IMG/VR virus record: IMGVR_UViG_3300034117_001294
Location: 1-64,000 of that record
Reading direction: 5' to 3' (one strand)
Length of the DNA stretch: 64,000 nucleotides
Of this stretch, positions 41,317 through 64,000 are shown in pieces (position 1 is the stretch's first letter; the number at the start of each line of letters is the position of its first letter). The notes below the pieces were generated by a model. It searched no databases, had not been told where the DNA came from, and saw nothing but the letters and a program-made list of their open reading frames with translations. The translations under genes and the position numbers were made by a program.

Positions 41317-41530
41317 AATTCATTGGTCTCGTGAATTTGAAAACGAGAAGATGTGGAACGAAGTATGTATATGGGCAATTGAGTACTTTGGTTTGCCCGG
41401 AGATCGATTTGAAACCCGGGCAAACGTCAATTACATGGAATTCATTTTTAAGAGCCGTAAAGATGCACTCCTTATGTCTCTTAGGTGGAACGCAGAGTTA
41501 CTTGAACCAGCCGACTTTGAGACCGTTTGA
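41300..41530 (+). CDS. Small protein, distant member of LRW cassette family
   Basis: W...FG..G.RF...F.F....DALLMSLRW. Confidence 0.55.
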   Translation: MSVIVKIHWSREFENEKMWNEVCIWAIEYFGLPGDRFETRANVNYMEFIFKSRKDALLMSLRWNAELLEPADFETV

Positions 41531-41917
41531 TATACGGTGTTGCCATTCTTCAACGCTGCCTGGATAACGCCAAGCCCACACAGCACACAGCATCATAAAC
41601 AATCCTGTGCCTGCTACCGCTTTCCAATTATAGGTAGTAAACCAAATAATTAGTAAGCTACAATCCATAGTAATGAACATGGCCCATTTGGCCTTAGTGG
41701 GGAACACACGCTTCTCGCCCCAGTTGCTCAAGAACGGTCCAAATAACTTGTGATTCATAATCCAGTTGTGCATACGTTCGCTTCCTCTAGCAAAACAGAA
41801 TGCGGCAATCACTGTGGGAGTCGACCACGGGATACCCGGAGTTACGATTCCGATGTAGGCAATGCCTAGGAATATAAATCCCAGTGTTACCCAAAATGCT
41901 TTTTTAATTTTATTCAT
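41498..41917 (-). CDS. ybaN: YbaN/DUF454 membrane protein
   Basis: LGIAYIGIVTPGIPWSTPTVIAAFCFARGSER.HNW...H..FGP.L.NW. Confidence 0.8.
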   Translation of the reverse strand: MNKIKKAFWVTLGFIFLGIAYIGIVTPGIPWSTPTVIAAFCFARGSERMHNWIMNHKLFGPFLSNWGEKRVFPTKAKWAMFITMDCSLLIIWFTTYNWKAVAGTGLFMMLCAVWAWRYPGSVEEWQHRISNGLKVGWFK

Positions 41918-43107
41918 AATATTTCCTTTAAACTTCGTGTTAGATAATCAATGTCTGCTTCTGTGTGATTAGGAGTTGGAGTTGCACGAAGTCGTTCTGC
42001 ACCCCAAGGTACCGTTGGATAGTTGATGGGCTGAAGATATATAGCACGTTCTTCTAATAGCCAGTCACTGATATGTTTGCATTTTCTAGCATCGCGAATC
42101 ATAATAGGAACAATGTGCGTATCACCTGGCATCACGTCGATATCGTTTGACAATAAATGTTCTTTAGTTTGTTGTGCTACATTAAAAATTCGTGTTCTAA
42201 GTTCAGGATGATCTGCAACGTACTTAACACTGGCCAATGCCCCGGCACATAGTACCGGGCTCATGGATGTGCTAAAGATAAAGCCTTGTGCATAACTGCG
42301 TACCATATCAATTAAGTCACGCCCGGCGGCAATATAGCCTCCTTGAACTCCGTAGGCTTTGGCCAGTGTTCCTTGAAACACGTCAACACCTTCTACGCAT
42401 CTCTGCTCTTCGGCAACTCCGGCACCGCGACTGCCATATAGTCCTACAGCATGTACTTCGTCAACATAAACCATTGCACCGTATAATCGAGCAATATCAC
42501 AAACATCACTAATCAGTCCTTTATCTCCGTCCATAGAATATACACCTTCCATTGTAATGATAGGTTGTGCGTCAATAGACATAGTCTGTAGTATTTCTTT
42601 TAAGTGTGCAAGATCATTGTGTCGCCAAACTGTAACAGGTGCTTGACTGCTTTTCATTCCTACAATCATACTGTTATGATTATTACTATCACTAATGTAA
42701 TGTGCTCCGGGTATCATGCGACCCATAACACTCAATGCAGCTTGATTGGCCACATATCCGCTAGTGAACAATAACGCACTGGTCTTGTCATGCAGCTTGG
42801 CTAACTCCCATTCAAGTGCTACATGATAATGTGTAGTTCCTGAAATGTTTCGTGTGCCTCCCGAACCTGCACCTGCTGTATCTAATGCTGTGTGCATTGC
42901 GTCCAATACTACTTTGTGCTGGCCCATGCCCAAGTAGTCATTTGAGCACCAGTTGGTTATGTGTTTGATATTGTATTTGCCATAGTAAACCGCTTTCGGA
43001 AATTCTCCTCGTTCACGAAGGATATCAGTGAATACTCGATAATTTCCTTCAGTCTTGAGTTTTTCCAAACTCTGTCCTATAGCGTCTTGTGTTTTTGGCT
43101 TTATCAT
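41914..43107 (-). CDS. hemA: 5-aminolevulinate synthase (Shemin/C4 pathway)
   Basis: WCSNDYLGM, GAGSGGTRNISGT, FTSGYVAN, VYSMDGD, DEVHAVGLYG, GTLAKAYG, FIFSTS, INYPTV. Confidence 0.9.
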   Translation of the reverse strand: MIKPKTQDAIGQSLEKLKTEGNYRVFTDILRERGEFPKAVYYGKYNIKHITNWCSNDYLGMGQHKVVLDAMHTALDTAGAGSGGTRNISGTTHYHVALEWELAKLHDKTSALLFTSGYVANQAALSVMGRMIPGAHYISDSNNHNSMIVGMKSSQAPVTVWRHNDLAHLKEILQTMSIDAQPIITMEGVYSMDGDKGLISDVCDIARLYGAMVYVDEVHAVGLYGSRGAGVAEEQRCVEGVDVFQGTLAKAYGVQGGYIAAGRDLIDMVRSYAQGFIFSTSMSPVLCAGALASVKYVADHPELRTRIFNVAQQTKEHLLSNDIDVMPGDTHIVPIMIRDARKCKHISDWLLEERAIYLQPINYPTVPWGAERLRATPTPNHTEADIDYLTRSLKEIL

Positions 43108-43148
43108 AATGTTAGTATTTAACCATATAAATATTCAAAAGGTAAGCA

Positions 43149-44177
43149 ATGGCTAAAACAACTGAAATTGAATTTGACGGTAAAGACATAGTGCTGTTAG
43201 ACGACGATTTAAACTACACTACGCATACAGTAGAATCTGTATTAAGTAAAGATCTGTCATTTTGGAAGGGCTGGCATTGTGCAATTGGCCTTCGATCGCT
43301 CTATATTGATTATGAAGGAAATGTAGTACGAGGAACCTGCAGGGAAGGTGGGGTAGTTGCTAACGTATACAAGAAATCCATTCCGTTAGACATTGCAATA
43401 GGTAATAAATGGACAGTTTGCGGAAAGCAGATATGTTCTTGCGGTGCAGATATGGCTGTGCCTAAGGTAAAGCATCAAGAAAGCATACTGAGATTTTTTG
43501 ATTCTAATAAAATTAGAGAATTCGATCTTAACTACAAATTGCCCAAAGTAGACGCAGAAGTTGTATATTCAACCAACTACAATTATAAAACCATAACATG
43601 GGCCATAGGCCGTAGATGTAACTTTGACTGCTGGTATTGTCCAGAAAGCGATCACAATAACTTTGAAGCACACAAAGATTACGACACTTTGATGTCTGCT
43701 TACAATATATTATCAACTCAATGGATCAAAGGTGAACCTACTAAGTTCAGTATGCTAGGCGGAGAACTGACTGTATATAAAGACTATCTGCCATTTGTTA
43801 AAACCTTAAGAAAAGACGGTCATGGATCTATCACTACAACAAACGGTAGTAGAGATGCTGCCTATTATGCAGAGCTGGCACAGGTTAGCGATCTATGCTT
43901 TAGTTTACATTTGAATTACTTAAAAACTTTAGGGATTGAAAAGTTTGTAAAAAGTATAGATGCTGCTATTCGAAATAAGGCTGAGAATTTTATTCGAATC
44001 CGCTTAATGGTAGACCCGGGTAATTTGGAATATGCTAAAGAAGTACACGAAATACTATTAGAAAAGTTTAATGGTCGTTGCCTAATCGCTATCAAACCTG
44101 TCCATGACACACAAGGTAAATTATTTCCATACGAGCCAAAAGAGATCATTTGGATACAAAACCCTATTGACAAATAG
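43149..44177 (+). CDS. Radical SAM protein with N-terminal Cys-rich SPASM/twitch-like domain
   Basis: CNFDCWYC and MLGGE in C-terminal half; GWHCAIG..IDYEGNV..C..C....CSC in N-terminal half. Confidence 0.75.
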   Translation: MAKTTEIEFDGKDIVLLDDDLNYTTHTVESVLSKDLSFWKGWHCAIGLRSLYIDYEGNVVRGTCREGGVVANVYKKSIPLDIAIGNKWTVCGKQICSCGADMAVPKVKHQESILRFFDSNKIREFDLNYKLPKVDAEVVYSTNYNYKTITWAIGRRCNFDCWYCPESDHNNFEAHKDYDTLMSAYNILSTQWIKGEPTKFSMLGGELTVYKDYLPFVKTLRKDGHGSITTTNGSRDAAYYAELAQVSDLCFSLHLNYLKTLGIEKFVKSIDAAIRNKAENFIRIRLMVDPGNLEYAKEVHEILLEKFNGRCLIAIKPVHDTQGKLFPYEPKEIIWIQNPIDK

Positions 44178-44195
44178 CATTCTTAATGCTATACT
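44167..44195 (+). promoter_or_regulatory. sigma70 promoter
   Basis: TTGACA-17-TATACT. Confidence 0.8.
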
Positions 44196-44219
44196 TGTTT
44201 ATCAACATAGGAGAATTCC

Positions 44220-44780
44220 GTGAACAGTGAAATTATGCAACGTTGGATGGAAATGGTTCAGTTTCGAATCACTGAAGGCAGTGATTACGGTTGGCAGTGT
44301 TTTGGTTATAATGCCTATACACTATCATCATGGGATGGCGATCAAGCTGGCACTAGTTTTAATATTACCTTTGACACAAAGGATCAAACAGTTTTTATGA
44401 TAGAAGCTCACGACTTCTCAAATGATCGTGCCTATCGTTGGATTGATCCTACTCATCAATCTCAGTTTACGCAAGAAGTTTCAAATCGCGGCATAACTGA
44501 TGAGGCTTGGGAAGATGTTCAATATGTAGATCTCGAAGTAGTTGACGACTGGTTTGAAAAAGCCACTGCTATATATAACGGAGAGCCGTATGATCAACGA
44601 GTCCAGATGCCAGTTGACTTTAGTGACGAAGAGTTGTTAAAGTATATGAAGCTGGCACACGAACGTGATATGACTTTCAACCAGTTTGTAGAAGAAGCTC
44701 TGCGAGCTGCCATTGAAGATTACAATCGTGACCCGGAGGGTACGAAGCAACGGGCAAAGGATTTTGTACGTGGCAAATGA
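44220..44780 (+). CDS. Hypothetical protein with C-terminal ribbon-helix-helix-like segment
   Basis: AGGAG RBS, GTG start; LMKLAHERDMTFNQFVEEALR-like end. Confidence 0.6.
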   Translation: MNSEIMQRWMEMVQFRITEGSDYGWQCFGYNAYTLSSWDGDQAGTSFNITFDTKDQTVFMIEAHDFSNDRAYRWIDPTHQSQFTQEVSNRGITDEAWEDVQYVDLEVVDDWFEKATAIYNGEPYDQRVQMPVDFSDEELLKYMKLAHERDMTFNQFVEEALRAAIEDYNRDPEGTKQRAKDFVRGK

Positions 44781-45087
44781 ACTGGCAAAATATCTAAACA
44801 GTCGCCGACGACATAAGGACGAGTCTGCTATTAAAAAACAGACCAAGATTGCTAAACAGCACAGAGTAAGCGAATACAATCCTGGTGAAGTTAAGCAACC
44901 ACATCGTTTCAATAAACGGCATGCAATGGACTGTGGTAACCCAGAATGCTTTATGTGCGGTAATCCACGCAAAACGCACAAAGACAAATTAACTACACAA
45001 GAAAAGCGTCTATTCCAAGATGTGGAAAAGACTTCCGATCGACACAGTAACGGATTGCCTCCAGATGACAAAGAAGATATACTATGA
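44770..45087 (+). CDS. Basic protein with CxxxxCxxC motif
   Basis: DCGNPECFMCGNPR; start uncertain. Confidence 0.5.
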   Translation: MANELAKYLNSRRRHKDESAIKKQTKIAKQHRVSEYNPGEVKQPHRFNKRHAMDCGNPECFMCGNPRKTHKDKLTTQEKRLFQDVEKTSDRHSNGLPPDDKEDIL

Positions 45088-45529
45088 GAAAGTTGGCCGC
45101 CGGTATATTCCAGTAGCCGAATATGATAACATGTTGCTAGACAGTTTCCCGAAAGGTGACCACCTAGTTATGTGTTACCCTGGTGGATCTAGCCGCAGAT
45201 TCAACATCGATCCACACTATGCACCTATGATTGCGGCTGGCCGTGTTGCTGAAGATGCTATCAGTAAAGCAGTGGTCAAAGCCAGCGAGATGCGTCCCCA
45301 CCGTACACCCATTACTGAGAAGCAACGTAAGGCTTGGGAATCTCTGGCCAAAGCATTTGACAATGATCGCTACTACATTGAAATCCCTAGTGCAAGAGAA
45401 ATTGCCGAAGCGGGAGTTAAAGCAATGATTGATGAAGCCGACAAACTAATGGAGCACGAAAGTGTACGCAAAGCCTACGATCATTTCCAACTAATGTGTA
45501 AATTGGTTAAAGAAAACGAACGTGAATGA
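45065..45529 (+). CDS. Hypothetical protein
   Basis: MTKKIYYEKVGRRY; start reassigned. Confidence 0.55.
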   Translation: MTKKIYYEKVGRRYIPVAEYDNMLLDSFPKGDHLVMCYPGGSSRRFNIDPHYAPMIAAGRVAEDAISKAVVKASEMRPHRTPITEKQRKAWESLAKAFDNDRYYIEIPSAREIAEAGVKAMIDEADKLMEHESVRKAYDHFQLMCKLVKENERE

Positions 45530-46302
45530 CTCGCTTTTTATTATTGATGCTAGTTTGCGGATCTGTTTGGGCTAAACCGTTACCTCAAAGTGTGTTGCTG
45601 TACAACGATACTACCGGACACCACCTAATTCAATCTAATGCAGACACTGTTCGTCCTATTGCCAGTATTACTAAACTAATGACTGCTATGGTTACGTTAG
45701 ATTATGACAAAGACCTTACCCGCACATTAAAATCTGCAGGCAAAGTCGGAGGAATACTGCCTCGAGGTACGTGGACACGAGGAGAGGTGATGCACGCCAT
45801 GTTGATTCGCAGTGACAACGATGCTGCCGAAACATTAGCAGCAGATTACCCCGGAGGTCGCAGTGCCTTTTTGGCAGCTATGAACGCTAAGGCTATATTA
45901 CTCAATATGCCTAACGCTAATTTTGGAGATCCGAGTGGACTCGATTCTAAGAATGTTACAACATTGCTCGGAGTTAAACGCTTACTGTTGGCAAGTTCAG
46001 AGTATCCTATTATCCGAGAAATTAGTGTAAAGAAACAGGCATTGTTTGATCATCGATTTAAAAAGAAAATACGTAAGATCGAATTACCAAATACCAACAA
46101 AGAATTATTATTTGAGTTTGACAATATTGTTGTGACTAAAACAGGACTAACTAATCCTGCAGGTTGGTGTTTAGGTATGGTTGTAGAACAGGGTGGACAA
46201 AAATATGTCATAGTAATTTTAGGTGCTAGAAATAAATTAGAGCGACTTAAAATTGCCAAAGAAATCATGTACAATAACATAACAGATACGGATTTGCGAT
46301 GA
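45526..46302 (+). CDS. Peptidase S11 (PBP7/DacA-like D-Ala-D-Ala peptidase) with signal peptide
   Basis: SITK (SxxK), SDN (SxN), KTG. Confidence 0.88.
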   Translation: MTRFLLLMLVCGSVWAKPLPQSVLLYNDTTGHHLIQSNADTVRPIASITKLMTAMVTLDYDKDLTRTLKSAGKVGGILPRGTWTRGEVMHAMLIRSDNDAAETLAADYPGGRSAFLAAMNAKAILLNMPNANFGDPSGLDSKNVTTLLGVKRLLLASSEYPIIREISVKKQALFDHRFKKKIRKIELPNTNKELLFEFDNIVVTKTGLTNPAGWCLGMVVEQGGQKYVIVILGARNKLERLKIAKEIMYNNITDTDLR

Positions 46303-47521: not shown

Positions 47522-47585
47522 TGGAGTTGACAAAATTAAAAAAATTTGTTAAAGTATTAGATAAACATACAGAAAGAATTTTATC

Positions 47586-48377: not shown

Positions 48378-49400
48378 ATGTCAAAAAAATATGATACCCT
48401 TGTCCTCATCGGACGTTTTCAACCGCTTCACTCAGCTCACTTAGAGATTATCAAGCGAGCCACAGCACTAACTGATCAACTTGTGATCATCTGCGGTAGT
48501 GCTAAACAACCCCGAACTTATAAAAACCCATTTACATTCGATGAACGTGCTCGAATGATCAAGTCAGCAACTGCTGGACTTGCTATGCAGATCTATGTTG
48601 AGCCAAATATTGACACTATCTATAACGATCAGGCATGGGCTGTTCGTGTCCAAGGTATTGTTTCTAAATACCGTGTACTAGGTGGTGCCGGAGTGGGCAT
48701 TATCGGTCATAAAAAAGATGACAGCTCATTCTACTTGGATATGTTCCCACAGTGGGGCTATGAAGATGTTGAATTAGTAGAATTCCTCAGTGCTGTAAAC
48801 ATTCGCGATCTCTACTTCAAGCGTGATGTCAATATGAAGTTCATTAAAGGTGTAGTGCCAGAGTCTACTTTAGACTTTTTGGAGCAGTTCCGCACCACAG
48901 ATCAATACGAACAGATCATCCGCGAACGTGAGTTCATCATAGAACACAATAAACAATATGCTGGATTGAAGTATCCTCCGATCTTCTCAACTGCTGATGC
49001 TGTGGTTATCTGCTCAGGACATGTATTAATGATTCGTCGTCGTGCTGAACCCGGTAAAGGATTGTGGGCATTGCCAGGCGGCTATGTTAACGCCAATACG
49101 GATAAAAGCGTAGAGGATGCAGCCATTCGTGAACTGCGTGAAGAAACACTAATTAAAGTTCCTGCTCCGGTGTTGCGTGGTAGTATTAAACGTAGTAAGG
49201 TCTTTGATGCAGTTGACCGTAGTCCGCGAGGTCGTATTATCACTCACGCATTCCACATTGAACTGCCTGACGGCGAGCTGCCAAAGGTAAAAGGCGGCGA
49301 TGATGCTGAAAAAGCACGTTGGGTTCCTATTGCCGAAGTTCGCAGTGAAGAATGTTTCGAAGACCACTACGAAATCATACAACACTTCTTGGGAGCATAA
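48378..49400 (+). CDS. nadM: Bifunctional NMN adenylyltransferase / ADP-ribose pyrophosphatase (NadM-Nudix)
   Basis: IGRFQPLHSAH, NPFTFDER, GHKKD.SS.YL, LPGG, Nudix box AIRELREET, DDAEKA.W. Confidence 0.93.
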   Translation: MSKKYDTLVLIGRFQPLHSAHLEIIKRATALTDQLVIICGSAKQPRTYKNPFTFDERARMIKSATAGLAMQIYVEPNIDTIYNDQAWAVRVQGIVSKYRVLGGAGVGIIGHKKDDSSFYLDMFPQWGYEDVELVEFLSAVNIRDLYFKRDVNMKFIKGVVPESTLDFLEQFRTTDQYEQIIREREFIIEHNKQYAGLKYPPIFSTADAVVICSGHVLMIRRRAEPGKGLWALPGGYVNANTDKSVEDAAIRELREETLIKVPAPVLRGSIKRSKVFDAVDRSPRGRIITHAFHIELPDGELPKVKGGDDAEKARWVPIAEVRSEECFEDHYEIIQHFLGA

Positions 49401-49401
49401 T

Positions 49402-49578
49402 ATGAACGAACGAATTAAAGAACTTGCCGAACAGTGCCACCATCGGTATAGTGAACATAACATTGATTTGGAAAAGTTCGCCGAGTTGATTGTTCGGGAA
49501 TGTGCTAATGTTGCCGCTGATCATGATGCCTTGGACATTTACGAAGAGATTAGAGAACATTTTGGAGTTGAAGAATGA
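49402..49578 (+). CDS. Small NERI...EKFAELIVREC...HFGVEE cassette protein, copy 1
   Basis: Paralog of 49808 ORF. Confidence 0.7.
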   Translation: MNERIKELAEQCHHRYSEHNIDLEKFAELIVRECANVAADHDALDIYEEIREHFGVEE

Positions 49579-49811
49579 ATGGTACACCGGCAGACAAAAG
49601 CCCGGGCATAACGGGCTTTATTGAAATCTTTGAGGGCAGGCTTAACAAAATGAAGCTACACCTTAAAGAAGAATTGAGCAAGGCCAAACACGATAGAGAC
49701 CGTAAGTGGATTAAACATCAGCTGGCCGATGCTCGTAAACTCAACAAGACACTGAAAGAAATGCGTAATGCTTCAGCAAAGAAGTGTCCGCATTGTGGAG
49801 AGAAACTATGA
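49575..49811 (+). CDS. Small protein with C-terminal CPHC zinc ribbon
   Basis: KKCPHCGEKL; ATGA overlaps. Confidence 0.6.
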   Translation: MNGTPADKSPGITGFIEIFEGRLNKMKLHLKEELSKAKHDRDRKWIKHQLADARKLNKTLKEMRNASAKKCPHCGEKL

Positions 49812-50041
49812 ACGAACGAATTAGAGAACTTGCTGAACAGGCTGGAGTGGGCTTTATGTTTGATCCTGATGCAGTTGTATTAGCTTTTAAGATGGAAAAG
49901 TTCGCTGAACTGATTGTGAGAGAATGTATTAAAAAATGTAAGGACCATCCATCCATAATTTTTAAGAATGAATGGGATGCTGATGTTGTGGCTCCGGACA
50001 TTGTCAGCAGATTAGAATCACATTTCGGAGTTGAAGAATGA
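49808..50041 (+). CDS. Small NERI...EKFAELIVREC...HFGVEE cassette protein, copy 2
   Basis: Paralog of 49402 ORF. Confidence 0.7.
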   Translation: MNERIRELAEQAGVGFMFDPDAVVLAFKMEKFAELIVRECIKKCKDHPSIIFKNEWDADVVAPDIVSRLESHFGVEE

Positions 50042-50511
50042 CATTAAAACATACTAAAGGTAATCTACTCGACCTAGCAGAAGCAGGTGAGTTCGATGTT
50101 GTGGTACAAGGCTGTAATTGCTTTAACACAATGGGCGGCGGCATTGCCCGAGAGATCCGTGAACGATTTCCAATGTGTGCAGAGATCGATAATCTAACTG
50201 CCAAAGGCGATCATATGAAACTAGGTAACTGGACAGAATTTGACCAAGGTACTTTTATTATCATCAATGCCTACACTCAGTACAATATGAGTCAAGGTAC
50301 TGATGTGTTTGAGTACACTGCATTTCAATTGATACTTGAGAAATTAACATTTATGTACGGTAACAAACGTATTGGATTGCCTTACATTGGATGCGGACTT
50401 GCCGGTGGCGACCAGGAAACTATTTTGGATATGATCGAACGGTTTGCCGCCCAGATTGCTAAACGAAGTGGTCAGGTTACACTCGTTGAATTTAGCCAAA
50501 GAATTAGTTGA
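50038..50511 (+). CDS. Macro domain (ADP-ribose binding/hydrolase) protein
   Basis: KGNLLD, VVQGCNC.NTMGGGIA, IINAYTQ, PYIGCGLAGG. Confidence 0.85.
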   Translation: MTLKHTKGNLLDLAEAGEFDVVVQGCNCFNTMGGGIAREIRERFPMCAEIDNLTAKGDHMKLGNWTEFDQGTFIIINAYTQYNMSQGTDVFEYTAFQLILEKLTFMYGNKRIGLPYIGCGLAGGDQETILDMIERFAAQIAKRSGQVTLVEFSQRIS

Positions 50512-50536
50512 CGCAGAAATAGGTCTGTGTTATACT
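50508..50536 (+). promoter_or_regulatory. sigma70 promoter for NAMPT
   Basis: TTGACG-17-TATACT. Confidence 0.7.
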
Positions 50537-50589
50537 ATAAACAAGTCCAAGCGATAGACGCCTGGCATAACAAGTAAAGGAACTTTACA

Positions 50590-52029
50590 ATGAAACTCGC
50601 AAAAAATCTTATCCTGAACACAGACTCGTACAAAGTCTCGATGTTCAAACAATACCCAGCAGGAACCACAGGTGTATATTCATATATTGAATCACGCGGT
50701 GGGCGTTACGATAGAACTGTATTCTTCGGACTACAGGCTTTTATCAAGGAATACCTACTTGCACCCATCACACAAGCAGATATTGACATTGCTGAAGAAA
50801 TTCTTACCCTACACGGTGAACCCTTTAACAGAGAAGGATGGCAGTATATTCTTGACCAGCACCAAGGATTCTTGCCCGTTGTTATCCGAGCAGTCCCTGA
50901 AGGAACTATTGTCCCTGTCAAAAACGTACTCGCTACCATTGAGAATACCGATCCAAAATGTTATTGGTTGACCACTTGGTTGGAAACTGCTCTGCTTCGT
51001 GCAGTGTGGTACGGTACTACTGTGGCAACACAAAGCTGGAAAATTAAACAAGTCATTCTTGACTACTTGGAGCGTACAGGTGACCCTACTACTATTGATT
51101 TTAAACTGCACGACTTTGGTGCTCGCGGTGTATCTAGCCTCGAAAGTGCTGGGATCGGTTCTGCGGCTCACCTCGTTAACTTTATGGGAACGGATACCAT
51201 TACTGGTATTCTTTACGCTCGTGAGTATTATGGAGCTGGCATTGCTGGGTTTTCTATTCCTGCTGCCGAACATAGCACAATCACTTCTTGGGGTCGCGAC
51301 GGTGAAGTAGATGCTTACAGAAATATGCTTACTCAGTTCGCTCGTCCCGGTACTATCCTCGCTGTTGTTAGTGATAGTTACGATATCTACAACGCAGCCT
51401 CTAAGCTCTGGGGCGAAGAACTTCGCCAACAAGTTATCGATAGTGGTGCTACTGTTGTCATTCGCCCTGATAGCGGCGATCCTGTTGAAGTCAACCGTAA
51501 GCTAGTTGAGATCCTTGGATCCAAGTTCGGATACACTACTAACAGCAAAGGCTTCAAAGTCCTGAACAACGTCAGACTGATCCAAGGTGACGGTATTAAC
51601 GAACTTACTGTTCGCAGTATCCTCGGTGCGTTCATGGCCATGGGCTGGAGTGCCGATAACATTGCTTTTGGTATGGGCGGTGCTCTGTTACAGATTGTAG
51701 ATCGTGATACTCAACAATTTGCAATGAAGTGCTCTGCAATGAGCCGTACTGTTAGAGTTGAAGATGGTGATCTCGGATCTGGTTTTAAAACTGAATGGTT
51801 TGATGTGATCAAAGACCCAGTCACTGATCCTGGCAAGAAGTCTAAGGCAGGCCGTGTTACACTGTGGACTAACAGTGGTGGCGAGTTTGCATCAGGGGTA
51901 ACTGAACCTACTGGTTGGACTGATCGGGGAATCGGCGGGTGGACCAACGCACTGGTTCCAGTTTACTGGAACGGCAACCTGCACAAAGATTACACCTTTG
52001 AGGAAGTTCGAGCTAACGCTCGCAAATAA
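50590..52029 (+). CDS. nadV: Nicotinamide phosphoribosyltransferase
   Basis: TDSYKVS, FFGLQ, LHDFGARG, PAAEHS, VSDSYD, IRPDSG, IQGDG, FGMGG. Confidence 0.95.
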   Translation: MKLAKNLILNTDSYKVSMFKQYPAGTTGVYSYIESRGGRYDRTVFFGLQAFIKEYLLAPITQADIDIAEEILTLHGEPFNREGWQYILDQHQGFLPVVIRAVPEGTIVPVKNVLATIENTDPKCYWLTTWLETALLRAVWYGTTVATQSWKIKQVILDYLERTGDPTTIDFKLHDFGARGVSSLESAGIGSAAHLVNFMGTDTITGILYAREYYGAGIAGFSIPAAEHSTITSWGRDGEVDAYRNMLTQFARPGTILAVVSDSYDIYNAASKLWGEELRQQVIDSGATVVIRPDSGDPVEVNRKLVEILGSKFGYTTNSKGFKVLNNVRLIQGDGINELTVRSILGAFMAMGWSADNIAFGMGGALLQIVDRDTQQFAMKCSAMSRTVRVEDGDLGSGFKTEWFDVIKDPVTDPGKKSKAGRVTLWTNSGGEFASGVTEPTGWTDRGIGGWTNALVPVYWNGNLHKDYTFEEVRANARK

Positions 52030-56566: not shown

Positions 56567-56568
56567 AA

Positions 56569-57699: not shown

Positions 57700-57732
57700 A
57701 TATTTTCATACACTGCTTGAAAGATTTATAAA

Positions 57733-58569: not shown

Positions 58570-59261
58570 CATATGAATGGAATGATATATTAATTGTAGG
58601 GGATAGTTTTTGTGCAGACCGCACTGAGAAAAGTGACTGGCCAAATATATTTACATCTTCCCTTACAGGTCAGCTATTTCATCCTACTCTACAAGTTAGG
58701 GGTGAAGGATTCAAGGGTGCAAGCTGGTGGTCGGCTAGGAAAAAACTATTAGTAGAACTAAAACACAGACCTGTAAAAGTTTTGGTTGTTTGTCATACAG
58801 AACCTTACAGAATTCCAAACGATCGAGGACTGGGTATTAATACATTAAGTGTCGAAACTAAGAATATAACAACTCCTCCCGGTGTTGAGAAACCTTCTGA
58901 AAATTTTATCAAAGCAGCCCTTGGGTATTACGAATATATTATATCCGAAAAATATCATCTTTGGGCATACCAACAATGGTTTAATGAAATAGATAAAATT
59001 GCCGTCGACAATAACATAGAAAAAGTTATACACTTCTTTTGTTTTCGGGGAGACTATAATAATCATACTTTTGCCAGAGGAGTTACTATAGAAACTCCGT
59101 TAATCGATCTGCAACAATATTCAGCATTGTGGAAAAAGAACGATACTAGGAATCACTTTCCACCCTTACAAAATTCAGAGTTCGGTGATAAGTTAGCAGG
59201 TATAATAAAAAACTATCCCGGAGACGGTGTAAGATTAAATATCAAGTTAATAGGAAAATGA
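58566..59261 (+). CDS. Hypothetical SGNH-like protein
   Basis: IVGDSFC N-terminus; RNHF..LQN C-terminus. Confidence 0.45.
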   Translation: MTYEWNDILIVGDSFCADRTEKSDWPNIFTSSLTGQLFHPTLQVRGEGFKGASWWSARKKLLVELKHRPVKVLVVCHTEPYRIPNDRGLGINTLSVETKNITTPPGVEKPSENFIKAALGYYEYIISEKYHLWAYQQWFNEIDKIAVDNNIEKVIHFFCFRGDYNNHTFARGVTIETPLIDLQQYSALWKKNDTRNHFPPLQNSEFGDKLAGIIKNYPGDGVRLNIKLIGK

Positions 59262-59262
59262 A

Positions 59263-59622
59263 ATGACACAACTTAAAGGACTGGTTCCAAAAGGTTGGGG
59301 CTCGGAATTTATCTGGGCCACAAACGACAAGTATTGCGGCAAGTTTATGAACTTTAACGCGGGTGCAAAGTTCAGTATGCACTTCCATAAAGACAAAGAA
59401 GAAACTTGGTATATACAAAGTGGCAAGTTTCTTGTTCGATGGATTGATACTAAGACTGCTGAATTATACGAAAAAGAATTGCGTGATGGTGCAGTATGGC
59501 ACAATACACCCTGTATGCCACATCAACTAGAGTGTATCGAAGCCGGAACTGTTATCGAAGTATCCACACCAGACAGCGTGGAAGACAACTACCGTGTAGG
59601 CAAAGGCGACAGTCAAAAATGA
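59263..59622 (+). CDS. Cupin (sugar isomerase-like)
   Basis: KGWGSEFIW, SMHFH.DKEETW, PHQL. Confidence 0.75.
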   Translation: MTQLKGLVPKGWGSEFIWATNDKYCGKFMNFNAGAKFSMHFHKDKEETWYIQSGKFLVRWIDTKTAELYEKELRDGAVWHNTPCMPHQLECIEAGTVIEVSTPDSVEDNYRVGKGDSQK

Positions 59623-60017
59623 CTCGAGTCATGGTAAATGGTACGTTTGATATTCTGCATCGCGGCCACCTCGAATTATTAAACTTTGCCAGAAGCAAAG
59701 GAGACACTCTACTAGTTGCTATTGATACTGATCGAAGAGTGAAAGAATTAAAAGGCGATGCTCGTCCCATTAACAATCAAGAAGATCGTAAATTTCATTT
59801 AGAAAATCTAAAGGCTGTTGATGGGGTAATGTTATTTGACAGCAAAGAAGAACTAATTGAGATTATGAAGGGTTGGGAGCCTGACATTTATGTAAAGGGC
59901 AGTGACTGGAAATCTAACTCTGGAACTGCACACCAATATTCAAAAGAAGTAATTTATTATGACAGAGTCGGCGAATACTCAACAACCAATATCATACAAC
60001 GTATTGCTGATCGGTGA
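59619..60017 (+). CDS. rfaE2: Cytidylyltransferase-family enzyme, RfaE domain II-like
   Basis: NGTFDILHRGH, LKG..RPIN, VKGSDW, YSTT. Confidence 0.8.
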   Translation: MTRVMVNGTFDILHRGHLELLNFARSKGDTLLVAIDTDRRVKELKGDARPINNQEDRKFHLENLKAVDGVMLFDSKEELIEIMKGWEPDIYVKGSDWKSNSGTAHQYSKEVIYYDRVGEYSTTNIIQRIADR

Positions 60018-60741
60018 TAGTTGTACTGATATCTATAATATAGGTACAGTAGATAGATTGAGCCCGGAGGCTCCTGTACCTGTTGTTAAAATTGTAGAAA
60101 CATTTTCACTGCCTGGTATGAGTGCAAATGTCCATAGTAATTTAGTACATCTAAATATTGAACCAGATTTTATACACAACGAAACTTCTATTACCAAAAC
60201 TAGATTCATAGATAAAAGGTCAGGTCAACATCTGCTTAGAGTTGACGATGAAGATGATGTTGTTCAATGGTCTGGCAGAACTACTGAGCCACTAGAGTCA
60301 TATGATGCTATTGTGATCTCAGATTACAATAAAGGATTCTTAACCTATGAGCACATTGAAAGAATTATAGGGTCGGTAAAATGTCCAGTGTTTATAGATA
60401 CAAAGAAACAAGACTTGTCAAGATTTAGGGCAGATCATTGCTATGTTAAAATTAACGAAACTGAATACAAAAATAGATTCAGTGTTCCAAAAAATTTAAT
60501 TGTTACATTAGGGGATCGCGGAGCACAATATAAAGATCAATTGTATCCAACTCAGTCAGTTGAAGTCATGGATGTGTGCGGTTGTGGGGATACATTTTTA
60601 GCCGCACTAACTGCTGAATATCTATACACAAAAGATATAGAAAAAGCTATAATATATGCAAACAAGGCGGCTAGTATTACTGTGCAACATCGCGGAAATT
60701 ATTCACCCACTTGTGAAGAAATCTCGAAAATCTCGGGATAA
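59959..60741 (+). CDS. rfaE1: PfkB-family kinase, RfaE domain I-like
   Basis: RLSPEAPVPV, KTRF, SDYNKG, DVCGCGDTF, N.AA.I.V. Confidence 0.8.
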   Translation: MTESANTQQPISYNVLLIGDSCTDIYNIGTVDRLSPEAPVPVVKIVETFSLPGMSANVHSNLVHLNIEPDFIHNETSITKTRFIDKRSGQHLLRVDDEDDVVQWSGRTTEPLESYDAIVISDYNKGFLTYEHIERIIGSVKCPVFIDTKKQDLSRFRADHCYVKINETEYKNRFSVPKNLIVTLGDRGAQYKDQLYPTQSVEVMDVCGCGDTFLAALTAEYLYTKDIEKAIIYANKAASITVQHRGNYSPTCEEISKISG

Positions 60742-60822
60742 ATAAATTTGTAGGACGCCGTTAGGGTTCTACAAATGGGGAATAGTTCCCCACAATGTTC
60801 TTGCTTATTAAGGAGAAAAACA

Positions 60823-61254
60823 ATGAACGCACTTTCACGCTTTGACACAACAGCTCTACAACATCTGAATAGAGCACTTATCGGATTCAATCGTATTTCA
60901 AACGATTTCGAAAACCGACACGTAAATTCCACAACAAACTATCCGCCTTATAATGTCATTCAACGTGACGAAAATAACTTTGAAATCGAAATCGCAGTAG
61001 CAGGTTTTGACAAAGAAGATATTACAGTTGCAGTTGACCAGGATCAATTAATCATCAAAGGTAACCGTACTAAAGATGAAGATTCGGAAAAGTACATTCA
61101 CCGCGGACTGGCTGCTCGTGATTTTGAACGGGCGTTTACGCTTGTAGATCACGTAGAAGTGGGCGATGCTGAGTTGACAAACGGCATTCTTCGTGTTAAA
61201 CTTACACGAGTAGTACCTGAAGCACTCAAGCCTCGTTTGATTGCCATCAAGTAA
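60823..61254 (+). CDS. Small heat shock protein Hsp20/IbpA
   Basis: NYPPYNV, IEIAVAGF, YIHRGLA.R.FER.F, L.NGIL.V; AAGGAG RBS. Confidence 0.92.
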   Translation: MNALSRFDTTALQHLNRALIGFNRISNDFENRHVNSTTNYPPYNVIQRDENNFEIEIAVAGFDKEDITVAVDQDQLIIKGNRTKDEDSEKYIHRGLAARDFERAFTLVDHVEVGDAELTNGILRVKLTRVVPEALKPRLIAIK

Positions 61255-61258
61255 GTTC

Positions 61259-61278
61259 AGGGGCTCCGGCCCCTTTTT
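61259..61278 (+). terminator. Intrinsic terminator
   Basis: agggg-ctccgg-cccct-tttt. Confidence 0.65.
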
Positions 61279-61289
61279 AGAAAGTCTAT

Positions 61290-61598
61290 ATGGCAAATAC
61301 CAAAACTAAAGATATTGTTGATATTGAAGAAGATTTTGACATTGTAACACCCGGCATGTACAAAGTGATTGTACTAAATGATGATCACACCCCAATGGAT
61401 TTTGTCATTGCATTATTGATGCATGTGTTTAAGCACAACGAATCTAGTGCAAAAGAAATAACAATGCGAGTACATGAACAGGGTGCAGGTGTTGCCGGTG
61501 TTTATACTTACGAAGTTGCAGAACAAAAAGGTGTAGAAAGCACAATGCTTGCTAGACAAAATGGTTGGCCACTAGCTGTTAGAATCGAAGAAGAATGA
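61290..61598 (+). CDS. clpS: N-end-rule adaptor ClpS
   Basis: YKVIVLNDDHTPMDFV, VHEQG.G, EVAEQK, PL. Confidence 0.93.
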   Translation: MANTKTKDIVDIEEDFDIVTPGMYKVIVLNDDHTPMDFVIALLMHVFKHNESSAKEITMRVHEQGAGVAGVYTYEVAEQKGVESTMLARQNGWPLAVRIEEE

Positions 61599-62821
61599 AA
61601 CAATACGCCGTTACTGGAATAGGAATCATTAATGGGCTAGGTGCAAGTGTTCAAGAAAACTGGAAAAATCTGTTAGCAGGAGAAACTGCAATTAAACAGA
61701 TCAAATGGCCTGAAGATAATCCGACAAAATTTCCAAGAACACATAAATCTTTAATTGTCTCTTCTGGAGCACCGTGTCCGTTACCTGCGTTTGAAGAAGC
61801 AGAATTTGGAGGGCATCACCAGTATTGGGATCCGTGTGTTAAAATATCAATGCACACTGCTAGAGATGCTATCAGAGACAGCAATCTTACTAGCAAAAAT
61901 GTTTCAGTAGTGTTTAGTACCACTGGTGGAAGTTTACATAGTAGAGCATACATGATGCGACAACTAGAAGATGGCCGCGAAAGAGTTTCACCAAGGCAGG
62001 TAATACAAGCAACTGCGGATTACATTAGCGGATTGATTGCTAGGATATACGAATGCAACGGTGGTTCAACTTCGATGCACTCTGCATGTTCAACTGGACT
62101 AACTGGTATTGATTATGCTATTAAGCAACTAGAATTTAATGACGATCTCGATGCTGTCATTGTGGGAGGTGCCGACGTACCCATTGAAGGCTTCCAAGTA
62201 TACTACTTTCAAAATCTCGGTGCATTAAGTTTACAACCAGCAGAAATTGCCAGTAGACCTTTTGACAAAGATAGATCAGGATTTGTAGCAGGAGAAGCTG
62301 CTGGCACACTAATTATCGAACCGTTAGATAAAGCCAAAGCACGGGGTGCAAAGATTTACGGAATAATCAAGTCTGTGGGAATTGCCACAGCTGGTAATAA
62401 TGATACTGCCCCAGATAAAAACGGTGACGCTGCAAAGTTAGCAGTAACCAGAGCAATAAAACAAGCAGGCATACAGTTAGCCGATGTCGGATATATTAAT
62501 GCACACGCTACCGGAACTAAAGTCGGAGATGACATTGAATTTTATGCCATGCGTGAGTTGTTGCCAGGCACAACAATGACGGCAAATAAAGGACAAATTG
62601 GACACACGTTGGCTGCAAGCGGAATTGTTGAAACTATCTACACTGTGTTAGCACTACGAGATCAAATATCACCCCCTACTGTAAATTTAACTAACCCAAT
62701 TGATGTAGGAATCAATATTCCTACCAAGGCCACGGTGATTGCAACTAAGTATGCAATAAAGAACAATTTTGCATTCGGCGGCAGGGCTGCTTGTGCAGTA
62801 TTAGAACGTTACGAGGATTAA
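61595..62821 (+). CDS. fabF: Beta-ketoacyl-ACP synthase II
   Basis: Cys-His-His triad SACSTG, INAHATGT, GHTLAASG; RPFDKDRSGF, NNFAFGG. Confidence 0.9.
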   Translation: MKQYAVTGIGIINGLGASVQENWKNLLAGETAIKQIKWPEDNPTKFPRTHKSLIVSSGAPCPLPAFEEAEFGGHHQYWDPCVKISMHTARDAIRDSNLTSKNVSVVFSTTGGSLHSRAYMMRQLEDGRERVSPRQVIQATADYISGLIARIYECNGGSTSMHSACSTGLTGIDYAIKQLEFNDDLDAVIVGGADVPIEGFQVYYFQNLGALSLQPAEIASRPFDKDRSGFVAGEAAGTLIIEPLDKAKARGAKIYGIIKSVGIATAGNNDTAPDKNGDAAKLAVTRAIKQAGIQLADVGYINAHATGTKVGDDIEFYAMRELLPGTTMTANKGQIGHTLAASGIVETIYTVLALRDQISPPTVNLTNPIDVGINIPTKATVIATKYAIKNNFAFGGRAACAVLERYED

Positions 62822-63373
62822 ATGAGTCTTAAAGAATTAACAGCAGAAAATCACGATCGTGCAGAACACACACCTTTTATGAAGGCAGTGTTTGCAAAGA
62901 CATTACCCAGAGAAATATGGACAGACTGGACTTTACAAAAGTCCTTATTTTACGGTGCAATCGAAGGTGCAGCCGGTGCTAACAGATTACTAGGCGACTT
63001 GCCCGATCTGCGTAGAGAATTTTATCTAAACATGGACTACAATGAGATGAACGGGCAAAATCCTCGTCACTCATATCGCCCATTGGTTATTGATTATTAC
63101 AACTATATATTAAGCATCAGTCAAGATCCTAATAAGGTTATGGCACATTTATATGTGTGGCATATGGGAGATATGTTCGGCGGACAAATGATTAAGAAGA
63201 TTGTTCCGGGTCCGCATCGCAATTTAGAATTTGAAGATGCTAACACATTAAAAACTAACATTCGTGCTAAGTTAGATGACAGCATGGGCGACGAAGCCAA
63301 TGTAGCTTTTGAATGGGCTATCAAAATTATGGAGTCATATAACAATGAGCTTGGTCTGGAACAGTCTAATTGA
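62822..63373 (+). CDS. hemO: Heme oxygenase (HemO-like)
   Basis: LKELTAENH..AE (proximal His), AHLYVWHMGDMFGGQ, EANVAF. Confidence 0.85.
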   Translation: MSLKELTAENHDRAEHTPFMKAVFAKTLPREIWTDWTLQKSLFYGAIEGAAGANRLLGDLPDLRREFYLNMDYNEMNGQNPRHSYRPLVIDYYNYILSISQDPNKVMAHLYVWHMGDMFGGQMIKKIVPGPHRNLEFEDANTLKTNIRAKLDDSMGDEANVAFEWAIKIMESYNNELGLEQSN

Positions 63374-64000
63374 TATACAAACTGAGTTTGAAAGACAATT
63401 CAATCTCAGTGGTACAGAAGTACAAGAGCCGGGCTTAGAAAGATTCAGTTGGTACAACAAAGTCTGGACCAGTAGCTTATATCGCAGAGCACACATCGAT
63501 GTAGTAGATGCTAGAGAAACCAAGGGCCTATGGATGATGCATTGCTGTGTGTTTCCGCATACTCATAATCCTGCACCTATCTTTGGATTTGATGTAGTAG
63601 CTGGCAAAAACAAAGTAACAGGTGCGTTTCACGACTTTAGTCCTGCTGGTGATCCAGAGCATCCGATGCTAGATTATTTTGCAGACGAAGCACAAAAATT
63701 AGAGTGGAACAAAGTTAGACGTTTGCCCGACTGGGCAGAGCGTATCTTTACTCCTAGCATGATCAGTGCGGGAAACGTTAACGATCCAACTGAGCTTCAA
63801 CAACTGTATTTTACTGCTATTAATAACTTAAAGCATTTCATTAACACAGTAGGCGAGACAAACGGAACTGCATTAGACACTGGTCCTGCACAGGATTACT
63901 ATTGTGAAAATCAAAGACAGAATCCCCATACTCCTAAAGTAATGACTGCATTGGGTTTGAATCCAGAAGACGTTCGTGTGTTTATACAGGACTGCCTGTT
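63345..64000 (+). CDS. pcyX: Ferredoxin-dependent bilin reductase, PcyA/PcyX-like (3' truncated by window; absent from ORF track)
   Basis: Stop-free frame from ATG 63345: YRRAH, WMMHCCVFP, PIFGFDVV, FHDFSP, LPDWA.IF, YCENQRQNPHT.KVM. Confidence 0.85.
   Translation, partial: MSLVWNSLIDIQTEFERQFNLSGTEVQEPGLERFSWYNKVWTSSLYRRAHIDVVDARETKGLWMMHCCVFPHTHNPAPIFGFDVVAGKNKVTGAFHDFSPAGDPEHPMLDYFADEAQKLEWNKVRRLPDWAERIFTPSMISAGNVNDPTELQQLYFTAINNLKHFINTVGETNGTALDTGPAQDYYCENQRQNPHTPKVMTALGLNPEDVRVFIQDCL

What the first reader, a model, noticed from the sequence alone, without database searches (positions are those of the whole stretch)
41498..64000. Phage tetrapyrrole-to-bilin route: ALA synthase + YbaN, heme oxygenase + PcyX-like reductase
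Seen: a bona fide 5-aminolevulinate synthase (GTRNISG, INYPTV, PLP Lys) on a late motif, ATGA-coupled to ybaN. At 62822-64000 hemO overlaps a bilin reductase that retains the His (MHCC) and Asp (HDFSP) of the PcyA/PcyX type; the ORF track missed it. Established: ALAS is the committed heme-entry step in alphaproteobacteria; phage HemO+PcyX convert heme via biliverdin to phycoerythrobilin in phages thought to infect non-cyanobacterial hosts, with unknown purpose; YbaN often lies in heme-utilisation loci. Inference: this phage both pushes flux into heme and drains it into a bilin, so it is making pigment rather than just scavenging iron. Possible uses are a photosensor or antenna chromophore, an antioxidant, or CO/Fe release. 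The hemO-pcyX pair sits directly behind clpS-fabF. I am not aware of ALAS having been linked to this cassette.
Basis: partly seen in the sequence, partly recalled or inferred. Interest (0 to 1): 0.8.

Follow-up and report, generated by a model that had tools for sequence, protein, structure and literature searches.

The report
Phage heme-making and bilin-making genes
A large, probably freshwater phage carries the enzyme that starts heme synthesis and, 20 kb away, enzymes that break heme down into coloured bilins. This combination was already published in 2024, and the local twist is that this phage has two different bilin reductases in a row.

Summary
The window, the first 64 kb of a 229-kb IMG/VR phage contig, encodes four relevant genes:
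- a 5-aminolevulinate synthase (41914-43107, minus strand) that scores above the curated ALAS cut-off;
- a DUF454/YbaN membrane protein overlapping it by ATGA;
- a heme oxygenase (62822-63373);
- an overlapping PcyX-type bilin reductase that runs off the window end.

One detail is wrong. The catalytic Asp lies in GFD (D83), not in HDFSP.

Wegner et al. 2024 (Nat Commun, PMC11480375) described phage valaS together with hemO and pcyA/X, including this "broken cassette" layout. They also showed that a close homologue (phage CB_2) makes ALA.

Three things the paper's text does not mention:
1. A second reductase paralogue lies just past the window end. It carries Glu where PcyX has Asp, so PCB is predicted alongside PEB. 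Tandem pairs occur on only 7 contigs.
2. Hsp20-ClpS sits directly upstream of hemO-FDBR in 87 of 126 module variants. FabF is a clade-specific insertion.
3. ALAS-DUF454 pairing recurs across two phage backbones but in none of the 80 nearest cellular ALAS loci.

The purpose, pigment or signal versus iron release, remains open. I rate this a new member of a known kind, of moderate interest.

The parts
41914..43107 (-). Viral 5-aminolevulinate synthase (vAlaS), 397 aa
   Evidence: TIGR01821 at 532.9 bits, above the 338.55 cut-off. PDB 2BWN and 7X98 at E about 1e-123, with the PLP Lys and GTRNISG loop aligned. R. capsulatus His342 is Lys here, and there is no Cys in the C-terminal 50 residues. Close to the experimentally active CB_2 vAlaS. 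dN/dS 0.04.
41498..41917 (-). DUF454/YbaN-family small membrane protein, 139 aa, overlapping the ALAS stop by ATGA
   Evidence: PF04304 at 99.5 bits. Overlap read. It carries the family signature AAxCFAxSSxRxH shared with E. coli YbaN. It is adjacent to ALAS in 21 of 28 ALAS-anchored loci, and in 23 of the 80 best DUF454-anchored loci. dN/dS 0.04-0.05.
43116..43121 (-). TAAATA core motif 14 nt upstream of the ALAS start; a possible phage late-type promoter or initiation signal
   Evidence: Heptamers containing this core are 13-19 fold enriched in the 60 nt upstream of genes. Position read. Its function is inferred only.
60775..61254 (+). Hsp20 small heat-shock protein, first gene of the conserved Hsp20-ClpS-HemO-FDBR module
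   Evidence: PF00011 at 69.6 bits. Directly upstream of ClpS-HemO-FDBR in 87 of 126 unique module variants. GATAAATAA lies 36 nt upstream.
61260..61278 (+). GC-rich hairpin (GGGGC-TCCG-GCCCC) followed by TTTTT, between Hsp20 and ClpS
   Evidence: Read directly from the sequence printed. The terminator scan did not report it. Its function is inferred.
61290..61598 (+). ClpS, the N-degron adaptor of ClpAP
   Evidence: PF02617 at 94.8 bits. Aligns with Caulobacter ClpS 3DNJ, with the LNDDxTPMxFV and VHxxG pocket motifs present. Immediately upstream of hemO in most relatives.
61595..62821 (+). FabF-like beta-ketoacyl-ACP synthase II, inserted between ClpS and hemO
   Evidence: PF00109 and PF02801. 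TIGR03150 at 281 bits, below its 493.75 cut-off. Present at this position only in the window's clade: L029, L030, L031, L032 and L062.
62822..63373 (+). Heme oxygenase (HemO), 183 aa
   Evidence: PF01126 at 61.3 bits. His11 and GDMFGGQ align with HmuO His20 and the distal helix. dN/dS 0.06.
63345..64000 (+). FDBR1, a PcyX-type ferredoxin-dependent bilin reductase. 218 of its 226 codons are in the window and it ends at contig position 64025. The paralogue FDBR2 follows at contig 64022-64690, outside the window.
   Evidence: PDB 5OWG PcyX at 215 bits against 54 for PcyA. D52/H66/D83 match PcyX D55/H69/D86. The full ORF and FDBR2 were read in L029. Independent gene calls on at least 23 contigs show both PF05996 genes in tandem.

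Best explanation
This is a member of the already described class of aquatic phages that carry auxiliary genes for both ends of tetrapyrrole metabolism.

The ALAS end. [quoted passage not shown] It lacks the His342/Cys400 heme-feedback site of the Rhodobacter enzyme, so it should keep the host's own hemB-H pathway supplied during infection. It is co-transcribed, and probably translationally coupled, with a small DUF454 membrane protein whose role is unknown.

The bilin end. About 20 kb away on the other strand lies a tightly packed ClpS-FabF-HemO-FDBR1-FDBR2 string behind Hsp20.
- HemO opens heme to biliverdin IX-alpha, releasing Fe and CO.
- FDBR1 has the PcyX Asp-His-Asp triad. Using host ferredoxin, it should reduce biliverdin to phycoerythrobilin.
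- FDBR2 has Glu-His-Asp, the PcyA-type triad. It should reduce the 18-vinyl group and give phycocyanobilin.

Shown here: gene identities, catalytic residues, synteny, purifying selection and recurrence in many contigs.

Shown by others on homologues: vAlaS activity, HemO activity, PEB synthesis by PcyX, and PCB synthesis by a Glu-type phage FDBR.

Inferred: the products of these particular enzymes, the coupling between the two loci, and the reading that the bilins themselves are the selected product. That reading rests on two product-specific reductases both being maintained.
For: - ALAS membership and similarity to the assayed CB_2 enzyme.
- Loss of the heme-regulatory His342 and Cys400, as reported for vAlaS in general.
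- HemO catalytic motifs.
- FDBR1 is PcyX-like with D52/H66/D83.
- FDBR2 is 42% identical to FDBR1 and has E/H/D. Glu at this position is conserved in 116 of the 120 nearest cluster representatives.
- The literature holds that Glu76 is required for PcyA 18-vinyl reduction, that PcyX has Asp there and makes PEB, and that the Glu-type CB_2 FDBR makes PCB.
- dN/dS is 0.04-0.08 for ALAS, DUF454, HemO, FDBR1, FDBR2, ClpS and FabF.
- The tandem pair was assembled independently on at least 23 contigs.
- ALAS and HemO-FDBR co-occur on the same contig in at least 15 of the ALAS contigs.
Against: - No enzyme from this phage has been assayed.
- FDBR2 sits in a PcyX-like scaffold (155 bits to PcyX against 50 to PcyA), so Glu alone may not determine the product.
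- No ferredoxin, bilin lyase, GAF/phytochrome, globin-like bilin binder or other hem gene was found in the window or in the 10 kb downstream.
- HemO-FDBR modules mostly occur without ALAS within 10 kb: 117 of 126 variants. DUF454 mostly occurs without ALAS: 57 of 80 loci. The parts are therefore separable.
- In E. coli, co-expression of phage HemO and FDBR did not reduce the porphyrin build-up caused by vAlaS.
Confidence: 0.6

Rival explanations
1. Iron and heme economy rather than pigment. ALAS keeps respiratory and other heme proteins supplied. HemO is there to liberate iron from heme for the phage's iron enzymes: class Ia RNR, Fe-S assembly and radical SAM. The FDBRs merely pull the reaction by removing biliverdin, which inhibits heme oxygenase.
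For: - The same window encodes IscA-like, IscU-like and Fe/Mn-SOD genes wedged between nrdA and nrdB, and a radical-SAM enzyme next to ALAS.
- HemO-FDBR occurs in most relatives without ALAS.
- Wegner et al. also discuss an iron-supply role.
Against: - If only biliverdin removal mattered, there would be no reason to conserve the product-determining residue. Asp is kept in all 58 FDBR1-like unique sequences and Glu in 116 of 120 FDBR2 relatives.
- Nor would there be reason to keep two paralogues with different residues under purifying selection.
Confidence: 0.25
2. The two loci are functionally independent auxiliary genes that merely share a genome. ALAS-DUF454 serves cofactor supply, and Hsp20-ClpS-HemO-FDBR is a separate stress and proteostasis module. 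There is no designed 'push and drain' route.
For: - The loci are on opposite strands, 19.7 kb apart. The distance varies from 2 to 32 kb in relatives.
- Each module is frequently found without the other.
- ALAS sits in a minus-strand slot where relatives carry DUF454 alone.
Against: - In FDBR-anchored loci, ALAS within 10 kb is found only with Glu-type or tandem modules: 5 of 39 against 0 of 75, Fisher p = 0.004. DUF454 shows the same bias: 13 of 39 against 0 of 75. Phage lineage confounds both comparisons.
- Marine relatives have a contiguous hemO-pcyX-valaS cassette.
Confidence: 0.3
3. FDBR1 and FDBR2 are not alternative four-electron enzymes. They divide the work like PebA and PebB, each performing one two-electron step of a single route.
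For: - The genes are adjacent and overlap by 4 nt, as cyanobacterial pebA-pebB pairs do. That comparison rests on my own knowledge.
- The FDBR family has switched between two- and four-electron chemistry repeatedly.
Against: - Both paralogues keep a complete acid-His-Asp triad.
- Each type occurs alone behind hemO in most phages: 75 Asp-only and 36 Glu-only variants. Each must therefore be sufficient on its own there.
Confidence: 0.12

Closest known systems
Phage valaS / vhemO / vpcyA-X loci of Wegner et al. 2024 (Nat Commun 15:8783; CB_2 and GROS21-1 freshwater UViGs, marine Tara and JGI contigs)
   Same: - The same three enzyme families sit on one phage contig, in a 'broken cassette' layout with hemO-FDBR together and valaS apart.
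- The vAlaS lacks the heme-feedback residues.
- GC of about 41% matches the Lake Grosse Fuchskuhle UViGs.
- The C-terminal block of the vAlaS is 46/47 identical to GROS21-1_SAMEA9560623_UViG_0005.
   Different: - The window's IMG sample ids are not in their tables.
- Here two FDBR paralogues stand in tandem, one Asp-type and one Glu-type.
- The paper's text and held supplements mention neither DUF454/YbaN, nor ClpS, nor tandem reductases.
PhiHemO-PhiPcyX mini-cassette of uncultured marine phages (Ledermann et al. 2016, 2018; PDB 5OWG) and Pelagibacter phage Mosig
   Same: - hemO is directly followed by an overlapping PcyX-type reductase.
- FDBR1 shares D55/H69/D86.
- Mosig has the same hemO-pcyX pair at 48% identity.
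   Different: - Mosig lacks ALAS, DUF454, Hsp20-ClpS and the second reductase at that locus.
- This phage is not a T4-like pelagiphage by its rIIA and ClpS. Their best cultured matches are PA5oct-like jumbo phages at 29% and 44% identity.
Bradyrhizobium sp. ORS278 island hemO-pcyA-alaS-bphP
   Same: It is the only cellular case cited with an ALAS next to hemO and an AX-clade Glu-type PcyA.
   Different: - A phytochrome that uses the PCB is adjacent there. No bilin-binding protein was found here.
- There is a single reductase there and no DUF454.
Cyanophage ho1 with pebS or pcyA
   Same: A phage-encoded heme oxygenase plus a four-electron bilin reductase, acting as auxiliary metabolic genes.
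   Different: - The FDBR lineage differs: cyanobacterial PcyA at 24-31% identity, or PebS.
- The host there has phycobiliproteins that use the product. This phage carries Gram-negative porin and CsgG-type genes and shows no sign of a cyanobacterial host.

Membership tests
5-aminolevulinate synthase (EC 2.3.1.37, TIGR01821) | Scores above the curated equivalog cut-off, and better than on the sister alpha-oxoamine synthases | tested here: met
   532.9 bits against a cut-off of 338.55. The bioF, kbl and SPT models are all below their own cut-offs.
5-aminolevulinate synthase (EC 2.3.1.37, TIGR01821) | PLP-binding lysine and the glycine-rich GTRNISG loop that recognises succinyl-CoA | tested here: met
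   Aligned residue by residue with R. capsulatus ALAS 2BWN (K248 in GTLAKAYGV; GAGSGGTRNISGTT identical).
5-aminolevulinate synthase (EC 2.3.1.37, TIGR01821) | [quoted passage not shown] | not testable with these tools
   Only a homologue (CB_2 vAlaS) has been assayed, by Wegner et al.. It is 51/59 and about 30/46 identical in the two alignment blocks seen.
Phage valaS-hemO-pcyA/X set (Wegner et al. 2024) | All three genes on one phage contig, with hemO and the FDBR adjacent | tested here: met
   The window equals IMGVR_UViG_3300034117_001294. ALAS is at 41914-43107 and hemO-FDBR at 62822 to 64025. Phage hallmarks are rIIA, rIIB, a tail fibre and a virion protein.
Phage valaS-hemO-pcyA/X set (Wegner et al. 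2024) | vAlaS lacks the heme-feedback residues His342 and Cys400 (R. capsulatus numbering) | tested here: met
   His342 aligns with Lys. The protein ends before position 400 and has no Cys in its last 50 residues.
Canonical heme oxygenase (PF01126) | Proximal heme-ligand His and the distal-helix GDxxGGQ motif | tested here: met
   His11 and GDMFGGQ align with HmuO His20 and GDLSGGQ.
Canonical heme oxygenase (PF01126) | Full-length match to the family profile | tested here: inconclusive
   Only profile positions 6-141 of 204 are matched. The C-terminal roughly 54 residues are diverged, though relatives have the same length and dN/dS is 0.06.
PcyX (AX-clade FDBR, PEB synthase): FDBR1 | Closest to PcyX, with Asp at the PcyA-Glu76 position plus the His and Asp of the triad | tested here: met
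   5OWG at 215 bits against 54 bits for PcyA. D52/H66/D83 match D55/H69/D86. All 58 FDBR1-like unique sequences are D-H-D.
PcyX (AX-clade FDBR, PEB synthase): FDBR1 | Converts biliverdin to phycoerythrobilin | not testable with these tools
   Requires an enzyme assay with HPLC.
PcyA-type (PCB-forming) FDBR: FDBR2, just outside the window | Glu76/His88/Asp105 catalytic triad | tested here: met
   E-H-D in the alignment. Glu is present in 116 of 120 nearest relatives. The triad's role is taken from the literature.
PcyA-type (PCB-forming) FDBR: FDBR2, just outside the window | Belongs to the cyanobacterial PcyA lineage | tested here: not met
   155 bits to PcyX 5OWG against 50 bits to Synechocystis PcyA. 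It forms a distinct viral clade with 100/99 support. It is therefore at most an AX-clade, PcyA-like enzyme.
DUF454 / YbaN (PF04304) | Profile match above cut-off and the family signature | tested here: met
   99.5 bits against a cut-off of 35.1. It shares AAxCFAxSSxRxH, FG, W and P positions with E. coli YbaN. The family's function is unknown.
ClpS N-degron adaptor (PF02617) | Profile match and the substrate-pocket motifs | tested here: met
   94.8 bits. LNDDHTPMDFV and VHEQG align with Caulobacter ClpS 3DNJ.

The most novel reading that the evidence does not exclude
A subset of large freshwater phages runs a self-contained, two-product bilin branch.
- A feedback-insensitive ALAS works with a dedicated DUF454 membrane partner, which may handle ALA or porphyrin, or may bind heme through its conserved Cys/His pair.
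- It feeds a HemO that supplies two specialised reductases: a PcyX-type enzyme giving PEB and a Glu-type enzyme giving PCB.
- The near-universal ClpS-Hsp20 neighbours tie this to remodelling of host proteolysis.

None of these three couplings is described in the published account.
Probability: 0.25. Interest if true: 0.6.

Novelty: new member of a known kind. Interest (0 to 1): 0.38.

Why it matters
The open question for phage hemO-pcyX genes in non-cyanobacterial hosts is what the bilin is for.

This phage does not answer that, but it sharpens the question. Two reductases with different product-determining residues are kept side by side under purifying selection. That is hard to reconcile with a pure iron-release role and suggests that product identity matters.

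The recurrent ALAS-DUF454 pair gives the orphan YbaN family its first consistent metabolic partner. The conserved ClpS-hemO junction is a testable lead linking N-degron proteolysis to heme turnover.

All three leads are cheap to test in E. coli with existing assays.

Tried and rejected
1. Glu-type FDBRs exclusive to ALAS phages. My first synteny table suggested this. An FDBR2-anchored scan showed it was sampling bias: many Glu-type modules have no ALAS within 10 kb. Only a weaker, lineage-confounded enrichment remains.
2. Radical-SAM gene 43149-44177 as a HemN/HemW-type tetrapyrrole enzyme. Rejected. It gives only weak generic radical-SAM, viperin and MoaA hits and belongs to viral clusters of unknown function. 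It neighbours ALAS only in the closest relatives.
3. orf562, downstream of FDBR2, as a bilin-binding protein. No Pfam domain, a PHROG of unknown function, and only viral hypothetical look-alikes.
4. ALAS-DUF454 inherited from a cellular operon. Rejected: 0 of 80 nearest cellular ALAS loci have it, all Alphaproteobacteria-type at 48-55% identity.
5. DUF454 adjacency as a mere insertion-site accident. Partly rejected. DUF454 does sit alone in the same slot in relatives. However, the pair recurs in a second backbone whose ALAS is only 55-59% identical.
6. Canonical T4 late promoter. TATAAATA is not enriched and faces the other gene.
7. Ferredoxin or other Fe-S motifs in small ORFs. None found.
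8. Near-identical GenBank phage. None found. No GenBank phage record carries a true ALAS.
10. DUF454 function from the protein atlas. It returned only DUF454 clusters and no structure.

Full report
**What the window is.** The ALAS gene matches IMGVR_UViG_3300034117_001294 (228,849 bp) at 100% and at the same coordinates. The window is therefore the first 64 kb of that viral contig, and a second contig is identical over the region. The window has rIIA, rIIB, NrdA/B, NAMPT, a NadR-like enzyme, a tail fibre and a virion protein. Nothing in GenBank phages is similar at the DNA level. rIIA and ClpS find PA5oct-like Pseudomonas jumbo phages as the best cultured matches, at only 29% and 44% identity. 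I therefore call it a large myovirus-like phage rather than a T4-like pelagiphage. Porin, OMP and CsgG/CsgF-type genes point to a diderm host. A GC content of about 41% and near-identity of vAlaS segments to Lake Grosse Fuchskuhle UViGs suggest fresh water. Both the host and the habitat are inferences.

**Checking the observation.**
- The 397-aa minus-strand ORF 41914-43107 is an ALAS by the curated equivalog model: 532.9 bits against a cut-off of 338.55. The BioF, Kbl and serine palmitoyltransferase models fall below their own cut-offs.
- It aligns end to end with R. capsulatus ALAS, with the PLP lysine and the GTRNISG loop in place.
- The regulatory His342 is Lys and the C-terminal Cys400 is absent. 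This matches what Wegner et al. report for viral ALAS.
- DUF454/YbaN (41498-41917) overlaps the ALAS stop by ATGA.
- HemO (62822-63373) has the proximal His and the distal GDxxGGQ motif.
- The reductase begins at 63345, 29 nt inside hemO, and leaves the window after 218 of its 226 codons.
- It is far closer to phage PcyX (5OWG, 215 bits) than to PcyA (54 bits), and it carries D52/H66/D83, equivalent to PcyX D55/H69/D86.
- The 'late motif' is a TAAATA core 14 nt before the ALAS start. That core is strongly enriched upstream of genes. The canonical TATAAATA in the same 41-nt spacer faces the divergent radical-SAM gene and is not enriched in the window.

**Already known.** Wegner et al. 2024 (PMC11480375) report valaS in marine and freshwater phage contigs. 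They found it alone, as a three-gene cassette with hemO and pcyA/X, or as a 'broken cassette' with hemO and pcyA/X together and valaS nearby. [quoted passage not shown] The CB_2 HemO is active, and the CB_2 FDBR, which lacks the PcyX Asp55, makes PCB. The window's ALAS belongs to the same freshwater clade. The window's sample ids do not appear in their tables, so this is a further member of the class.

**A second reductase.** Reading past the window end in L029 shows a second PF05996 gene overlapping FDBR1 by 4 nt, at contig 64022-64690 (222 aa).
- It is 42% identical to FDBR1 and still nearer to PcyX (155 bits) than to PcyA (50 bits).
- At the PcyA-Glu76 / PcyX-Asp55 position it has Glu, with the His and Asp retained.
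- The literature treats this position as the determinant. Glu76 is required for 18-vinyl reduction and is specific to PCB-forming PcyA. PcyX has Asp there and makes PEB.
- Glu is conserved in 116 of the 120 nearest cluster representatives of a family of 1,079 metagenomic proteins. The viral Glu-type sequences form a supported clade.
- The exact FDBR2 protein, with FDBR1 in front of it, was assembled on at least 23 contigs from several ENA and NCBI samples. The tandem is therefore not an assembly artefact.
- Tandem Asp+Glu pairs are rare: 5 of 126 unique module variants, on 7 contigs.
- ALAS is confirmed on five of those contigs. On the other two, its expected position is off the contig end, or on another contig of the same sample.
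- dN/dS is 0.05 for FDBR1 and 0.07 for FDBR2.
- An FDBR2-like sequence is present in Wegner's supplement (GROS21-1_SAMEA9560623), but I found no mention there of tandem reductases.

**The neighbourhood of hemO.** Across 126 unique HemO variants from about 190 IMG/VR loci, 87 have Hsp20 and ClpS directly upstream, usually with ClpS abutting or overlapping hemO. FabF between ClpS and hemO is confined to the window's clade. The ClpS keeps the N-degron pocket motifs. I found no paper linking ClpS to phage hemO. Mosig, the only cultured phage with PcyX, lacks this arrangement.

**ALAS and DUF454.**
- From the ALAS side, 21 of 28 loci have DUF454 immediately downstream on the same strand, and two have it upstream.
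- From the DUF454 side, 23 of the best 80 loci (out of 483) have ALAS immediately upstream.
- These include a second phage backbone whose ALAS is only 55-59% identical and which shares none of the other neighbours.
- DUF454 also sits alone in the same minus-strand slot in relatives that lack ALAS.
- None of the 80 nearest cellular ALAS loci has DUF454 within 5 kb.
- The pair is thus phage-specific and recurrent, but DUF454 does not depend on ALAS.
- All viral copies share with E. coli YbaN a signature AAxCFAxSSxRxH, which has a conserved Cys and His.
- The family's function is unknown. The literature offers only iron-starvation induction in one bacterium.

**What is not there.** No ferredoxin-type cysteine motif was found in any called gene. 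Pfam scans of essentially all window genes, and of the 10 kb downstream, found no GAF, phytochrome, globin, lyase or further hem gene. The radical-SAM neighbour of ALAS and the conserved 562-aa ORF after FDBR2 belong to viral families of unknown function. The phage must therefore rely on the host for hemB-H and for ferredoxin, at least as far as the 74 kb I could read.

**Interpretation.** The enzymatic route is well supported by homology to assayed proteins: ALA in, then heme to biliverdin to reduced bilins. Its purpose is not established.
- For 'the bilin matters': strict conservation of the product-determining residue within each reductase type, and retention of two types side by side.
- For 'iron and heme economy': the IscA-SOD-IscU block inside the RNR operon, and the fact that most HemO-FDBR modules lack ALAS.
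- For 'independent modules': opposite strands, variable spacing and separability.
- ALAS and DUF454 are enriched near Glu-type or tandem modules in FDBR-anchored loci (5/39 against 0/75 and 13/39 against 0/75). Phage lineage confounds this, and the marine cassettes pair ALAS with Asp-type PcyX.

**Limits.** Only 10 kb beyond the window could be read. Locus retrieval is capped at 80 per scan and depends on the anchor. The FDBR tree has long branches and an unsettled bootstrap. Product predictions rest on one residue. No read or transcript data could be obtained.

Noticed in passing
window 21218-26545: An iron and Fe-S block lies inside the ribonucleotide reductase operon. The order is nrdA, IscA-like (23563-23892), Fe/Mn superoxide dismutase (23868-24437), IscU-like (24421-24795), class II aldolase, nrdB.
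   Followed up: partly
window 38295-39533: A full ClpX homologue (ClpX zinc finger plus AAA domain) lies 2.4 kb from ALAS and is syntenic in many ALAS loci. With ClpS and Hsp20, the phage carries three proteostasis genes. ClpX is known to activate mitochondrial ALAS (my own knowledge, not tested here).
   Followed up: partly
L029 11353-20654 (contig 64697-73998) and L271: Downstream of the reductases lie a conserved 562-aa viral ORF of unknown function, CsgF-like and CsgG (curli-type secretion) genes, a FecR-domain protein, an F5/8 type C protein, a carbamoyltransferase, DUF6321, a GATase and a CHASE2-guanylate cyclase.
   Followed up: partly
window 397, 4527, 6255, 10711, 31463, 34429, 36562 (gene starts): The enriched TAAATA core often sits exactly 11-12 nt before the start codon. 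That is too close for a T4-style late promoter with a leader. It may mark leaderless transcripts or a translation signal.
   Followed up: no
window 9542-10285, 61595-62821, and an unlocated ACPS hit within 28805-59504: The window carries lipid-metabolism genes: a fatty-acid desaturase, a FabF-like ketoacyl synthase and a 4'-phosphopantetheinyl transferase family hit.
   Followed up: no
window 43149-44177: A radical-SAM protein from a viral family of unknown function is divergently transcribed from ALAS across a 41-nt spacer, which holds a canonical TATAAATA on its strand. It is linked to ALAS only in the closest relatives.
   Followed up: partly
window 41914-43107 (residues about 341-345): All viral ALAS sequences aligned keep an invariant Cys-Lys at the site where R. 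capsulatus has the heme-sensing His342. The local sequence is KCKH. It might be a different regulatory site.
   Followed up: no
L320-L325, L328, L330, L342, L344, L348, L354, L356: A second group of viral contigs (GC 35-41%) carries an ALAS only 55-59% identical to the window's. It is again followed by DUF454, but without any of the window's other neighbours.
   Followed up: partly
window 48378-52029: NadR-like cytidylyltransferase/NUDIX and nicotinamide phosphoribosyltransferase genes form an NAD salvage pair of a kind known from other large phages.
   Followed up: no
L109 (Pelagibacter phage Mosig, record 43207-43977): Mosig annotates a 'putative ferrochelatase' 2.3 kb from its hemO-pcyX pair, among four 2OG-Fe(II) oxygenases. 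This is another tetrapyrrole-related gene in a PcyX phage.
   Followed up: no
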